Shown here: piece by piece, positions 13,575 to 64,000 of the stretch
Layout: each line of letters begins with the position of its first letter
Position numbering within the stretch: position 1 is the first letter of the stretch
DNA from: Iphione sp. A-MEVVRFRX5
Lineage: Eukaryota
NCBI GenBank assembly: GCA_976226885.1
Contig: OZ320316.1
Coordinates: 117,304,001 to 117,368,000 of the forward strand
Length of the DNA stretch: 64,000 nucleotides
Reading direction: 5' to 3'
Program-made: the position numbers and the translations under genes
The notes under the pieces: generated by a model
Told to the model about the DNA's origin: nothing
What the model saw: the letters and a program-made list of their open reading frames with translations, nothing else
Database searches by the model: none

Positions 13575-13995
13575 AGTACCCACATCAAGGGTCACTCTAG
13601 GGGGACTGAGCCTAATCCACATACCGACACTAGGAACCCACATCAACGCTCACTATAGGGGGACTGAGACTACACCACATACTGACACTAGGTACCCACA
13701 TCAACGGTCACTCTAGGGGGACTGGGCCTGCACCACATACGACACTAGGCACCCACATCAACGCTCACTCTAGGGGGACTGAGCCTACTGCACATACCGA
13801 CACTAGGTACCCACATCAAGGGTCACTCTAGGGGGACTGAGCCTACTGCACATACCCACACTAGGTACCCACATCAACGCTCACTCTAGACGACTGAGCC
13901 TACACCACATACCGACACTAGGTACCCACATCAACGCTCACTATAGGGGGATTGAGCCTACTCCACATACCTACAGTAACCACAACAAGGGTCAC
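13575..13995. repeat. 58-bp minisatellite next to the exon 3 acceptor
   Basis: CCCACATCAA recurs at 13579, 13637, 13695, 13752, 13810, 13868, 13925. Confidence 0.95.
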
Positions 13996-50894: not shown

Positions 50895-51310
50895 ATATTG
50901 CTGATAAGTGAGAGCGACACTCATCCTGACAGTGACAGTGTCTCTGACAGTGACACCTCCCTGACAGTGACAGTGCCCCTGACTGTGACAGTGACACCCT
51001 CCCTGACAGTGACGGTGCCTCTGACAGTGAGAGTGTCACTGACAGTGCCACTCTCCCTGACAGTGACAGTTCCTGAGACAGTGAGAGTGTCACTGACAGT
51101 GCCACCCTCTCTGACAGTGACAGTGCCCCTGACAGTGACACCCTCCCTAACAGTGACAGTTCCCCTGACAGTGACACCCTCCCTTACAGTGACAGCACCT
51201 CTGACAGTGACACCCTCCCAGTGACAGTGTCCCTGACAGTGACAGCCTCCCTGACAGTGACACCCTCCCTGACAGTGACAGGGTCTCTTACAGTGAGAGT
51301 GACACTGACT
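50895..51310. repeat. CCCTGACAGTGACA-type minisatellite about 20 nt from the donor of the flip/flop-homologous exon
   Basis: Direct reading. Confidence 0.93.
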
Positions 51311-51443: not shown

Positions 51444-53254
51444 CTGAAAGACAGAAGCTTAGTGAGGGAAGGAGTCTTCAGACAAACCTGCGGATATGTG
51501 GCTTGAATCGATCTATTCCATCTATTGTTTACAATAACTGTGTTAATGTGACCAATTTACCAATCATACGCCTAGTACAAATAGGACTATGTATCTTAGA
51601 CCATTCTGCGTAGCTGATCTTTCTACCGAAAATACTGATCAATCAATCTCCGTTCAACTTTCAACACTACGTAAGAAATGTATATCTTTACACACAAGCT
51701 GAAGTCCCTGAGATTAACTCTCTCCGGGCGCGACTGATCAGACAGATAGTCTCCCTAATCCATTCTATCTACAGGAATGTACAGAGCATGCAGGAGGGGA
51801 TTCTTCTTTCATTAGATTATTCATACATCCTAGACATACGACCTGTATCTGACACGCCACTTAACTGATATACTGACTCTATATCCAGGTATGTGGGTTG
51901 CTTCAGACTCTCCCCAGTTCAATGCCGTCACCATAACACCCGATTTATTGCGATGAAGCAAGGGATACCTGATCATGTTTTTTACAGGGTGGTCTGGGTT
52001 GATATCCTGGGTATCACCAGACATTCCTTGACATGCCTTCTCCATGTTAACAGGAGGCACGTAAGGGAATGTAGCGTTCACATGATGATCATGTGACCCA
52101 CATTTTCGTACTGGTTGTTATATCAATCAGATGTTTACATCATGTATGAGCATGCCCCACTTCTGTCTTGTTTGACTGCAGTATTATTCGTGAGATGAGA
52201 AGGAGAGCAGGACATTGTGGAATGTCTGTTGGGGACTTCCAGGATAAAATTCTGTGCATGACATAAGAATAGTGGCGATCGCCATGACCAAGGTCGTGAA
52301 GGACAAGAGGAAAAGGCACCCTTGATTCTGGGTGCAGCTTATCATACAAGCTAGGGCCCTTTTGCAAGAGTTCTTTTAGTGAGGCTATTCAGACTGTCAC
52401 TCAGTTTGAATGATGTGGGGAAAGTGACACGCACAACCTGAATAGTGATAACACGTACGGAACGAGTGGCAAGTTTCCTCCACATTCCTCCACATCTCAA
52501 GTCAATCTCAGACCATTATCTTTCGGCCAATTCATGTTATGTTATAATCTGGGCCCATCTCTATGTCTGAATTTCAGTCCATCTCGGACCGTAATTTTTT
52601 CCTCCTATGATTTAGATCCATTTTCATGGGTGTATCTAGCTGTCTAGGAGTCCCGCCTCCAGCCCCATACTACATGGAAAGGGTCTCATTCTTTCTCCTA
52701 ATTCCACGTTTTCCTGTACACCCATACATGGGATCCGGGATAGAAAGCTTCATACATGGAGAGTTTAATGGTGGACGTGTCACCTTGAAGGTGACCTTGA
52801 AAGATGGACGTGATTGATGTGAGACGCCGATCCTCTCGGTAGTTTCTAAACTCACGTCGTTTTAAGAAAGATAAAAATGGACTGGTAAAATACGAGGCTG
52901 GGCGGCGCCATTTGTCACGGAGGGCGGAGGGCGCACCACTGGCCCTTCTCCTGGGTCAGCCCATCTGTCACAGGCCGCCGGTTATTTACATCCGGGCCAC
53001 ACTGGAGGTCACGTGATTAATCAACAACGAGTGAGGGCCGCTCTGATTGGCCGGTAGCTCAGATACCACGTGAGTTCTGATAAACTGGCAGTGACGTCAG
53101 AACTCGTAGTTTTCGTGGAATGGTGGAGACAGCATTTCCCTCCGATATCCCTCCTTCCATTCTGATTCCAAAGTCACTCTTCTTTCCTCTCTTTCTCCGT
53201 CTAATTTATCAAGACGTCCTTGTGCTGGTTCTTTCATTTAACCTCCCTCCCTCT

Positions 53255-54170
53255 CTACCCACCCCATCCTCCCTATATCCACCCTGTCCTCTCTACCCAC
53301 CCCATCCTCTCTACCCATCCCGTTCTCTCTACCCACCCGGCCTCTCTACCCACCCTGTCCTCTCTACCCACCCTGTCCTCTCTACCCACCCTGTCCTCTC
53401 TACCCACCCCATCCTCTCTACCCATCCCGTTCTCTCTACCCACCCGGCCTCTCTACCCACCCTGTCCTCTCTACCCACCCCGTCCTCTCTACCCACCCCG
53501 TTCTCTCTACCAACCCCATCCTCTCTACGCACCCCATCCTCTCTACCCACCCCATTCTCTCTACCCAACCCGTCCTCTCTACGCACCCCATCCTCTCTAC
53601 GCACCCCGTCCTCTCTACCCACCCCATCCTCTCTACGCACCCCATCCTCTCTACGCACCCCGTCCTCTCTACCCACCCCATCCTCTACCCAACTCTCTAC
53701 CCACTCCATGTCCTGTCTACCCAATCCCCCTCTACCCAACTGTTCCTCTCTACCAATCCCATCCTCCATACCAGCCCTCTCCTCTCTTCCCACCCTGTCC
53801 TCTCTACCCGTCCCATCCTCCCCATCCAGCCCCTCCTCTCTACCTGTCCCTTCCTTCCCAACCACCCTGTCCTGTCTATCCACCCTCTCTTCTTTACCCA
53901 TCCCGTCCTCCCCACCCATCCCGTCCTCTCTACCGGTCCCATCCTCCCCATCAATCCCGTCCTCTTTACCCATCCCGTCCTCCCCACCCATCCCATCCTC
54001 TCTACCCATCCTGTCCTCCCCACCCACCCTCTCCTTTCTACCTGTCCCATCCTCCCCACCCAACATGTCCTGTCTATCCATCCTCTCCTCTTTACCCAGC
54101 CTGTCCTCTCTACCTGTCCTGTCCACCCCACCCACATTGTCCTCCCTACCCAACCTCTCCTCTCCCACTC
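53255..54170. repeat. 18-bp minisatellite (CCCTGTCCTCTCTACCCA) abutting the S2-exon donor
   Basis: Direct reading; degenerates toward the exon. Confidence 0.95.
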
Positions 54171-54420: not shown

Positions 54421-54439
54421 CTGAAGAGAAAAAAACAGT

Positions 54440-54605
54440 CAGTATGACTTAGGGGAGTACGCAAGATCTATGGAGAAAGAGAGGGGAGTCAATGTGCCTT
54501 ACGGGAGTGTTAGAGGCCTAGAGAGACAGAGAGGGGAGTCCTTGTGACTTAGGGGAGTGCGAGAGGACTAGAGAGACAGAGAAGGGAGTCTGTGTGACTT
54601 CGAAG
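54440..54605. repeat. About 50-bp repeat x3-4 next to the S2-exon acceptor
   Basis: GGGAGTC-type motif at about 54484, 54534, 54583. Confidence 0.8.
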
Positions 54606-61210: not shown

Positions 61211-63227
61211 TCAGCGGGCGAAGGGCAAGAGAGTCATGTGATCAAACCACGGGAAGGTCGGCCTTAGAGTTACTTCGCGGTCAAATATTCACAGCTAAGT
61301 TAAATAGGCTTAAAAGAAACACTGCCCCGACCTGTCAAGGTCAAAGGTCAAAGTTTTATCTGTAGTGGGGGGAAGTTTATTTTTCCCGTCACAGTCAGAA
61401 TAAACATTGAGAAAAATGATGCCAAGTTGCGAAGAAAAGCACAAAATTGATTTTGGTTTCTTCTTTATCGCAAAGTAGACATTCACAGAATTATTGCTAG
61501 ACACATAAAACTAAGGACAAAAATAATCTAGTCTACAAAATTGGCAAAATGTTATCGCAAAGTTTCTGCAAAAGTAGAAAAGCAAATGTAACGAAATATG
61601 CTTCAACAAAAGTGAATGTTTTTCTTCTAGAGGTCGACATCAAGGTTATGGTTTTCTCTACTCACAGAAAATATAACAACAGACTTCAACTTGTGGACAA
61701 TAGGCATGAAAAATATACATAACCTTCACTGGGTGTATTAATAGGCATAAGTATGACGATATATACGAAAATATAGACAAGACCAGCTTATAATGTCATG
61801 GAGACTGAGAGGAGGTGAATGTAAGGTCAGTTGAAGGTCATCTCGGTCATTCCTGCTCCTTACCTTGCTGCTTTTGGTTAGAACGCCTCAAAAACGTCGG
61901 CTTGTCAAATAGGTTCATAGTATAAACTCCGCACATGAAGATATATCTAAATTCTAGTAAACTATTACGATTTATGGTGATATATCTAGATACAGGGCCT
62001 CCCCAAAATTTCTGTGTACAGATATGTTTCGAAACCTGACAAGAATCTGGGTTGATCAGCTTTTGTTAGGCCTAAAGAGTAAGCTTGTGGCCCGCTTGTC
62101 CAGTAGCATCTAGTCATGCATGCAGGTATCAGCAGCCCTCTGATTGGTTCATCATTCCCTGAGCAGCTCTCACTCGGGGCACTGCCACTAGAGCCTTTCC
62201 TGTAGCAGCAATATCAAATACTGAATACTCGGAATGACTAATCTGTAGTAGTAACAGCTACGCTGTTCTAAGGATGAAGCTGTGTAATTTTAATAACTAA
62301 ATCAAATATGGTGTTCAGTAAAATCTTATGTGCAGTAATAGCACCGTACACTACTTCCAGTAGAACTGACGGCTCGAGCCTTCTCATCATTACTAACTCG
62401 CAGTAGAAGCGCTGGTCTGTTTGATCAGTGCTGATGAATACGGATAGTCAACCTGCACTAGTAGCATCTACAGGTAATCGTTGTGTTCTACAGTGAGACC
62501 TCCTTCTTCAGCCACTACTGGGGCATGGCCGAATACCACATTCTACCAAGGTATTCCTTCCCCGTAATAGATGTATTTATTGGTTCTAAAACAGAGATTC
62601 CCCTGAGAGTTTCATGTCATGTCCTTGTAATTGGTGTATTCTATCAAAGCGATGAAAAACAACTCCATCTACAGTAGACAGAGAGAACTACGAAAGGGAA
62701 AGTGACAAAAACGAGTGGCCCAGTCTTCATTGGTGTCACATGACACAAGCAAGAGCCAGCGATTGGTTAAAACACATAGAAAATAAACCACGTGACGAAC
62801 ACGTGTTACCTTTGGAAGTAAAGCACGCAATAAACAATCTTATCGTAGTCAGACTGGCGCCTGCCCTCGGCCAGCCTCCATTAGGGAAGGGTCAGTATAT
62901 GGGTTACATATAGGGGCCTCAAAGGGAAGCTGTGCCACCTTGCAGGAGTGGAGGTTGTAAGCGAGGGGGGAGGGATCAGCGGCAAATTCATTCGATAAAA
63001 ACCGTCAAAGTTAAACCATGAAAAAAGATACATGCGCAAAAGACTTCTTCAGTGCTTCTCCTTTCAAAAATAGATAATTAGGTCACCTTTCAGCAGTTAA
63101 ATTAGTCGGCGATGGTTTAACCAGGCATTGTTAACATTATCTACGGAGTCCAGAAACTCTCATCAATGATATAATTCTACTTAAAACACCCCCCACACGC
63201 TACTCGGTGAGGGGACGGGCTACCTAC

Positions 63228-63440
63228 CCTATTGGTAAGTTCTCCGACCATTCCATTCCATGTGCCGTCCTGTTTCTTTTCGCCATATTTTCCATCTCCG
63301 ACAAGTCTTAGTATGTAATCAAAGCCCACAATGTTCGCCAGCTTCCTTGCCACGTCGGCACAGTAGCCCTCATAGCGCTCGTTGCCGATAAGGGGCGTGC
63401 CGTCATCCGGCTTCTTCTTCTGCATCAGGTACGGTGCAGA
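63228..63440 (-). CDS. GRIA-like: AMPA-type iGluR gene B, S1 exon (SAPYLMQ...ERYEGYCADVA...GDGKYG...GTWNGMVGELTNR)
   Basis: TTGCCTGCAG acceptor, AGG|GTAGG donor, 213 nt phase 0-0; YEGYC.D, DGKYG, WNGMVGEL motifs. Confidence 0.95.
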
Positions 63441-64000
63441 CTGCAGGCAAGAGGCAACACATGGAGAGACACATGAACACGATGTCATGCCTGCATCAGG
63501 TACGGTGCAGACTGCAGGCAAGATGCAATACATGGGAAGACACATGAACACGATGTCATGCCTGCATCAGGTACGGTGCAGACTGCAGGCAAGATGTAAC
63601 ACATGAAGAGACACATGAACATGATGTCATGCCTGCATCAGGTATAGTGCAGACTGCAGGCAAGAAGGATGCAACACATGGAGAGACACATGAACAAGAT
63701 GTCATGCCTGCATCAGGTACGGTGCAGACTGCAGGCAAGAAGGATGCAACACATGGGAAGACACATGAACACGATGTCATGGTGCATCAGGTATGGTGCA
63801 GACTGCAGGTAAGATGCAATACATGGGAAGACACATGAACACGATGTCATGGTGCATCAGGTATGGTGCAGACTGCAGGCAAGAAGGATGCAACACATGG
63901 GAAGACACATGAACAAGATGTCATGCCTGCATCAGGTACGGTGCAGACTGCAGGCAAGAAGGATGCAACACATGGGAAGACACATGAACACGATGTCATG
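63420..64000. repeat. 71-75-bp minisatellite containing the S1-exon acceptor plus 21 nt of exon; runs off the window
   Basis: TGCATCAGGTA.GGTGCAGACTGCAGG at 63421, 63492, 63563, 63634, 63709, 63783, 63853, 63928. Confidence 0.97.

What the first reader, a model, noticed from the sequence alone, without database searches (positions are those of the whole stretch)
63420..64000. Minisatellite that clones the S1-exon splice acceptor: at least 7 decoy 3' splice sites, most followed by an immediate stop
Seen: each 71-75-bp unit carries the pyrimidine tract, CAG and the first 21 nt of the exon (SAPYLMQ). Decoy AGs lie at about 63512, 63583, 63654, 63729, 63803, 63873 and 63948, upstream of the true AG at 63441. 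Most units read TCT GCA CCG TAC CTG ATG CAG GCA TGA (SAPYLMQA*). Established: 3' splice-site choice usually favours the first suitable AG after a branch point. Inference: the true site must out-compete near-identical upstream copies. Decoy use would give NMD substrates or an ATD-only secreted protein, so array length could tune receptor dosage.
Basis: partly seen in the sequence, partly recalled or inferred. Interest (0 to 1): 0.75.

Follow-up and report, generated by a model that had tools for sequence, protein, structure and literature searches.

The report
Splice-acceptor "mirage" minisatellite in AMPA-receptor intron
An intron of a worm glutamate-receptor gene holds 11 extra head-to-tail copies of the gene's own intron end plus exon start; this repeat type is already known as a "mirage" minisatellite, is common in this genome, and shows no sign here of regulating the gene.

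Summary
A tandem array unique to this locus (units of 70-75 bp) runs from window 63420 to 64297, 297 bases past the window end. It has 12 units: the true acceptor of the S1 exon of a minus-strand AMPA-type glutamate-receptor gene, plus 11 decoys, 7 of them in the window at exactly the stated positions. Every decoy keeps the AG and the pyrimidine tract. Ten of 11 keep a consensus branch site. All 11 lead to a premature stop.

The functional reading (array length tunes receptor dosage) has no support. Three orthologous loci in other species keep the same exon junction and have no array there, so the array is a recent, lineage-specific addition. The same window holds two more junction-copying arrays in the neighbouring paralogue. 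One relative has its own such array at a different exon of the orthologous gene. This scan had already noted at least seven such arrays elsewhere in this genome.

The type is published: "mirage" minisatellites in amphioxus, and boundary-spanning VNTRs in human F7, IFI6, CBS, LMNB2 and PDGFA. In the cases tested, splicing was mostly normal.

The array is most likely a tolerated by-product of slippage. Use of the decoys could not be tested because no RNA run was listed.

The parts
63228..63440 (-). S1 exon (A_e) of AMPA-type iGluR gene A, 213 nt, phase 0. It begins SAPYLMQKKKPDD.
   Evidence: AG and GT flanks verified. Pfam Lig_chan-Glu_bd E 4.4e-19. The junction is conserved in three orthologous loci.
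63441..63442 (-). AG of the authentic 3' splice site
   Evidence: The homologous acceptor position is used in L010, L011 and L012.
63420..63490 (-). Unit u0: the authentic intron end (50 nt) plus the first 21 nt of the exon. It is the founding, exon-side end unit of the array.
   Evidence: alignment
63491..64000 (-). Decoy units u1-u7, with bounds 63491-63561, 63562-63632, 63633-63707, 63708-63781, 63782-63851, 63852-63926 and 63927-64000. Each carries a branch motif, a pyrimidine tract, an AG and a 21-nt exon-start copy. Units u8-u11 lie beyond the window at 64001-64300 (L004 1001-1300).
63411..63419 (-). AAG x3 purine-rich stretch that directly follows the duplicated 21 nt in the real exon only. 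It is the first sequence that distinguishes the true site from the decoys and is a candidate exonic enhancer (inference).
   Evidence: 'next' column
63226..63227 (-). GT donor of the S1 exon, 213 nt downstream of the true acceptor. It is 284-1015 nt from the decoy acceptors.

Best explanation
This is an acceptor-type 'mirage' minisatellite. A segment made of the last ~50 nt of the intron plus the first 21 nt of the S1 exon was tandemly duplicated. The duplication probably arose by slippage or unequal exchange between short TGCAG repeats, which lie just 5' of the array and at the end of every unit. Unequal exchange or conversion then expanded it to 12 units inside the intron. The extra copies are intronic clutter. 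The gene still uses the exon-side acceptor, which is the ancestral one. The likely reasons are that only this acceptor lies 213 nt from the exon's donor and directly next to real exon sequence (exon definition), and that any transcript spliced at a decoy carries a premature stop and would be removed by nonsense-mediated decay. The array is therefore a tolerated, probably length-variable by-product of a genome prone to minisatellites, not a dosage device. Shown: the anatomy, uniqueness to the locus, the premature stops, absence from orthologues, and recurrence of the type. Inferred: the founding mechanism, why the true site wins, and neutrality.
For: Array anatomy and register. Unique to this locus in the genome. 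All 11 decoys give stops. Units differ by 0-12 positions. The outermost unit u11 is the most divergent. Two non-adjacent pairs are identical (u9=u1, u7=u4). Variation concentrates at two CpG sites. This is the pattern of a real, turning-over minisatellite. The orthologous loci L010, L011 and L012/L013 have the same exon series and the same ...TSI[L/M/I]|SAPYLM junction. Their introns at this position are 1840, 1168 and 300 nt, with no array at this acceptor. The same kind of array occurs at two donor sites of paralogue B in this window and at the acceptor of exon A_c in relative L011. Minisatellites cover 19% of 70 kb here and lie closer to exon borders than reshuffling within each intron predicts: 6 of 28 borders within 35 nt against 1.65 expected, and 3 straddled against 0.05 expected. 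Literature: mirages in amphioxus Adh3, globin, TnC and PGBD5 do not disturb splicing by RT-PCR (PMC3087553; PMC3902484). In human F7, LMNB2 and PDGFA boundary VNTRs only the authentic site is used (PMC1557585).
Against: There is no RNA evidence for this locus, so silence of the decoys is assumed, not shown. All 11 decoys keep an intact AG and tract, and none has been disarmed. That leaves room for low-level use. In human IFI6 and CBS, the two pseudo-sites nearest the authentic site are used. The nearest decoys would define exons of only 284-426 nt, which exon definition would not obviously exclude.
Confidence: 0.75

Rival explanations
1. The array works as a dosage control. A fraction of transcripts is spliced at decoy acceptors, becomes an NMD substrate (or yields an ATD-only protein), and variation in copy number sets the productive mRNA level.
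For: The decoys are complete branch-tract-AG modules nearly identical to the true site. All give premature stops. Pseudo-sites in IFI6 and CBS arrays are used constitutively.
Against: The array is absent from three orthologous loci. The same repeat type occurs at unrelated junctions and genes in this genome, which fits a mutational process rather than a purpose-built regulator. Published mirages splice normally. There is no RNA data.
Confidence: 0.13
2. Assembly artefact: the repeat is an over-expanded or mis-joined stretch and does not exist at this length in the animal.
For: Only one haplotype or assembly could be inspected.
Against: The units are diverged (0-12 differences) with CpG-type changes and length variants of 70-75 nt. 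The longest exact internal repeat is 126 nt, which long reads span easily. The same architecture is seen in independent assemblies of a relative and elsewhere in this genome.
Confidence: 0.03
3. Exon or intron birth. The 21-nt exon-start copies (7 codons, in frame, followed in 8 units by a GC dinucleotide after CAG) are occasionally included as micro-exons, adding SAPYLMQ repeats. Alternatively the array is a step towards a new intron, as in the Rogers/Ebner model.
For: 21 nt keeps the reading frame. Each copy is bounded by AG and, in 8 of the 11 decoys, by CAG|GC. The intron-gain model from mirages is published.
Against: The GC 'donor' matches the consensus poorly. The insertion would fall in the first S1 strand of the ligand-binding domain. 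No relative has extra SAPYLM repeats. No RNA evidence.
Confidence: 0.02

Closest known systems
'Mirage' minisatellites of amphioxus (Adh3: Canestro et al. 2002, cited in PMC3087553; globin BflGb6/BflGb9: PMC3087553; PGBD5, TnC: PMC3902484)
   Same: A tandem array whose unit spans an exon-intron border. BflGb6 is also the acceptor type (intron 3' end plus exon 5' part). The AG signals are retained in the copies, the edge units are the most divergent, and there are signs of concerted turnover.
   Different: The host is a different animal (per earlier scan notes an annelid-type worm; I did not verify this). There are 11 decoys of about 73 bp. Normal splicing and length polymorphism were shown for amphioxus but could not be tested here.
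Human boundary-spanning VNTRs: F7 IVS7 37-bp repeat, IFI6 (6-16), CBS IVS13, LMNB2, PDGFA (PMC1557585)
   Same: The first monomer of a minisatellite spans an exon-intron boundary, so the authentic splice site is followed by identical pseudo-sites that mostly stay silent.
   Different: Those are donor-type arrays, where the most upstream site wins by 5'-to-3' scanning. Here the array is acceptor-type and the authentic site is the most downstream one, so a different selection logic is needed (branch-point choice and exon definition).
Intron gain by tandem duplication across proto-splice sites (Rogers model; discussed in PMC3087553, PMC4974935)
   Same: Duplication of a segment that contains splice signals.
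   Different: No new intron or exon has formed here. The junction is the ancestral one, shared with three relatives.

Membership tests
Mirage (exon-intron-boundary) minisatellite | Head-to-tail tandem array of minisatellite-size units | tested here: met
   TRF period 75, 12.0 copies, 89% matches, L004 420-1297
Mirage (exon-intron-boundary) minisatellite | The unit spans an exon-intron border, and the authentic junction is the end unit of the array | tested here: met
   Each unit is 50-54 nt of intron end plus 21 nt of exon start. Unit u0 is the real acceptor.
Mirage (exon-intron-boundary) minisatellite | Splice signals are retained in the extra copies | tested here: met
   11 of 11 keep the AG and the tract. 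10 of 11 keep a yUnAy motif 34-38 nt upstream.
Mirage (exon-intron-boundary) minisatellite | Local origin, not a dispersed element | tested here: met
   All 9 genome hits of the unit pattern lie inside the array.
Mirage (exon-intron-boundary) minisatellite | Regular splicing is undisturbed (RT-PCR in published cases) | not testable with these tools
   No RNA run was listed, and the single run search was used.
Mirage (exon-intron-boundary) minisatellite | Length instability and concerted evolution, with divergent edge units | tested here: inconclusive
   The edge unit u11 is the most divergent, and identical non-adjacent units (u9=u1, u7=u4) suggest turnover. No second haplotype or individual was available.
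Conserved regulatory unproductive-splicing (AS-NMD) element | Conserved across related species | tested here: not met
   The array is absent at the homologous acceptor in L010, L011 and L012/L013.
Conserved regulatory unproductive-splicing (AS-NMD) element | The alternative sites are used in RNA | not testable with these tools
AMPA-type ionotropic glutamate receptor (host gene) | Lig_chan-Glu_bd and Lig_chan domains; closest solved relatives are GluA subunits | tested here: met
   Pfam hits on exons A_e, A_f and A_g. Best PDB matches are GluA2/GluA4, E about 5e-52.

The most novel reading that the evidence does not exclude
The decoy acceptors are used at a low but real rate, so copy-number variation of this array acts as a natural cis-acting control on productive AMPA-type receptor mRNA through NMD. 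More broadly, this worm lineage may have a mutational process that preferentially seeds minisatellites at splice junctions, creating such controls genome-wide.
Probability: 0.1. Interest if true: 0.55.

Novelty: new member of a known kind. Interest (0 to 1): 0.25.

Why it matters
As a single locus it matters little. It is one more example of a repeat type described in 2002 and seen repeatedly in this genome. Its value is as a clean natural test case for acceptor choice: twelve near-identical branch-tract-AG modules in a row, with the most downstream one being the authentic site. This is the mirror image of the well-studied human F7 donor array. Together with the other junction arrays, it also adds to evidence that minisatellites in this lineage arise at exon borders more often than chance predicts. 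That pattern bears on how introns grow and how cryptic splice sites are tolerated.

Tried and rejected
1. RNA evidence. The look-up of sequencing runs on a 10-kb stretch with six exons listed no run. In hindsight a shorter, exon-rich query might have done better.
2. Dispersed-repeat or transposon origin of the unit. Rejected: the unit is unique to this locus.
3. A hidden gene or RNA in the array. There is no ORF running through the array on either strand (the longest is 107 aa, made of repeat units), and no Rfam family matches.
4. Selection on the decoys. The acceptor core has fewer variable columns than the rest of the unit, but the units are not independent copies. I draw no conclusion from this.
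5. Other arrays next to exons (13576-13975, 54437-54600, 53250-54164, 50925-51309, L004 3405-4081). These abut splice sites but do not include them, so they are not mirages.
6. The original mirage paper (PMC117041) is not held. It is cited only through PMC3087553 and PMC3902484.
7. Identifying the relatives from their accession numbers in papers gave no hits.
I redid the work from coordinates.
9. I first took the gene for a kainate-type receptor. The PDB ranking shows it is AMPA-type.

Full report
**What is there**

On the minus strand, window 63440-63228 is a 213-nt, phase-0 exon with AG and GT flanks. It encodes the start of the S1 ligand-binding lobe of an ionotropic glutamate receptor (Pfam Lig_chan-Glu_bd, E 4.4e-19). 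The next exon's best solved relatives are GluA2 and GluA4 (E about 5e-52). The gene (here "gene A") is therefore AMPA-type, not kainate-type as I first assumed. I searched the exons one at a time and built no joined protein model.

Directly upstream of the exon in gene orientation, Tandem Repeats Finder reports a 75-bp-period array at 63420-64000. I fetched the flanking genome as L004, where window position = L004 position + 63000. The array continues there to window 64297, giving 12.0 copies at 89% matches.

**Check of the observation**

Splitting at the acceptor motif gives twelve AGs. Four more lie beyond the window at 64022, 64097, 64168 and 64243.

- Each unit is 70-75 nt: 50-54 nt of intron end plus the first 21 nt of the exon.
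- Around the AG, the decoys match the true site for 10-12 nt upstream (5 nt in one unit) and 7-21 nt downstream.
- Their pyrimidine fraction over -25 to -3 is 0.71, against 0.75 for the true site.
- Ten of 11 carry a yUnAy branch motif 34-38 nt upstream, with no AG in between.
- In phase 0, eight decoys read SA[P/L]YLMQA then a stop. Three read 29-31 codons before a stop.
- A 41-nt unit pattern with up to 3 mismatches occurs 9 times in the 1.18 Gb genome, all inside this array, and the reversed control occurs 0 times. A 1-kb query finds only this locus plus a weak match (67% identity) to the paralogue's exon.

It is understated only because the window ends inside the array.

**Is it a real array?**

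- Units differ from each other at 0-12 positions, and lengths vary between 70 and 75 nt.
- Changes concentrate at two CpG sites.
- The outermost unit is the most divergent. Two non-adjacent pairs are identical (u9=u1, u7=u4).
- The longest exact internal repeat is 126 nt.

This is the signature of a real minisatellite that is turning over, not of an assembly stutter. I could not lay reads to prove it.

**Gene context**

I mapped ten exons of gene A and six of a tandem paralogue, gene B. All have verified AG and GT flanks. The exon upstream of the array is at 65416-65306 on the window scale and ends ...RIVTSIL. The intron is 1865 nt, of which the array supplies 857 nt. The same intron also holds two decayed, non-tandem copies of the upstream exon's end plus its donor. 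One of them abuts a dispersed repeat with at least 2,600 candidate copies in the genome.

**Comparative evidence**

A word search with the exon found ORF fragments that are 85%, 77% and 73% identical. Gene B's equivalent exon is much more distant. The contigs that carry these fragments (L010, L011, L012/L013) hold the same series of exons A_a to A_f and the same junction...TSI[L/M/I]|SAPYLM. Their introns at this position are 1840, 1168 and 300 nt. None has a tandem array at this acceptor. The acceptor at 63441 is therefore ancestral, and the array is a derived addition specific to this lineage.

**The type recurs**

- In this window, gene B has two donor-type arrays built from an exon end plus its GT. 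One is at 5874-6351 (period 53, exon ends at 6329). The other is at 7694-8406 (period about 151, exon ends at 8382, five extra donor copies).
- Relative L011 has its own acceptor-type array at a different exon of the orthologous gene: 65-nt units, with four extra copies of the start of exon A_c.
- Minisatellites cover 19% of the 70 kb examined.
- I reshuffled arrays within their own introns as a null. Six of 28 exon borders have an array within 35 nt against 1.65 expected (P about 7e-4). Three are straddled against 0.05 expected. This sample is small and was chosen after the fact.
- Earlier notes of this scan report at least seven other junction-copying arrays in this genome, and one reports the same enrichment.

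**What is known**

One of those earlier notes gave me the name. I checked it in the literature.

- Tandem repeats that span an exon-intron boundary were termed "mirages" in amphioxus Adh3. They were found again in globin genes, where BflGb6 is acceptor-type like this one. RT-PCR there indicated regular splicing, and the arrays showed length instability, concerted evolution and divergent edge units (PMC3087553).
- TnC and PGBD5 cases likewise give no aberrant mRNA (PMC3902484).
- In humans, the F7 IVS7 VNTR and arrays in LMNB2 and PDGFA use only the authentic donor. IFI6 and CBS also use the two nearest pseudo-sites (PMC1557585).
- The original 2002 paper is not held.

**How it most likely works**

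Founding (inference): a TGCAG pentamer lies immediately 5' of the array and at the end of every unit. This fits slippage or unequal exchange between short direct repeats, followed by expansion.

Tolerance (inference from general splicing knowledge): only the authentic acceptor sits 213 nt from the exon's donor and directly before genuine exon sequence, which begins with AAG x3. Exons defined from the decoys would be 284-1015 nt long. Any mis-spliced product carries an early stop and would be a target of nonsense-mediated decay.

I put 0.75 on a tolerated by-product, 0.13 on real dosage tuning, 0.03 on an assembly artefact and 0.02 on micro-exon or intron birth.

**What could not be done**

Whether the decoys are used therefore remains untested. 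No second haplotype or individual was available to test length polymorphism.

**Verdict**

It is a new member of a known kind and is common in this genome. The regulatory interpretation is unsupported. Interest is low to moderate, mainly as a natural twelve-fold test case for acceptor selection.

Noticed in passing
window 5874-6351 (minus strand, gene B): Donor-type mirage. The last ~21 nt of exon B_4 (which ends at 6329) plus its GT donor are repeated about 9 times with period 53, including a perfect copy near 6138-6110.
   Followed up: partly
window 7694-8406 (minus strand, gene B): Second donor-type mirage. The end of exon B_3 (which ends at 8382) plus its donor is recopied five times at a spacing of about 150 nt.
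   Followed up: partly
L004 2155-2220 and 1520-1585 (window scale 65155-65220 and 64520-64585), minus strand: Two decayed, non-tandem copies of the end of exon A_d plus its donor (G|GTRGGTAC kept) lie inside the same intron as the acceptor array. They may be remnants of an older donor-type array broken up by insertions.
   Followed up: partly
L004 ~2040-2168 (window scale 65040-65168): A dispersed repeat of about 130 nt has at least 2,600 first-look candidates genome-wide at 86-94% identity. Copies also lie in gene B introns.
   Followed up: partly
window 1-70000 scale, introns of genes A and B: Minisatellites (19% of the sequence) sit closer to splice sites than within-intron reshuffling predicts: 6 of 28 borders within 35 nt against 1.65 expected, P about 7e-4. 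Several begin 8-36 nt from a donor or acceptor without including it.
   Followed up: partly
L011 2680-3003: In a related species, the orthologous gene has its own very young acceptor-type mirage at exon A_c: 65-nt units, with four near-identical extra copies of the intron end plus the first 34 nt of the exon.
   Followed up: partly
window ~21400 to 1 and beyond (gene B) and 68429-48469 (gene A): Two tandem AMPA-type iGluR paralogues lie on the minus strand. Their S1 exons are only about 50% identical in protein, so the duplication is old.
   Followed up: partly
window ~44000-44270: A run of 245 N (a gap or masked stretch) lies between the two receptor genes.
   Followed up: no
window 63420-64000, plus strand: Read on the plus strand, each unit contains a good donor-like motif (CAG|GTACGG). 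It would matter only if there is antisense transcription. No plus-strand gene was seen.
   Followed up: no
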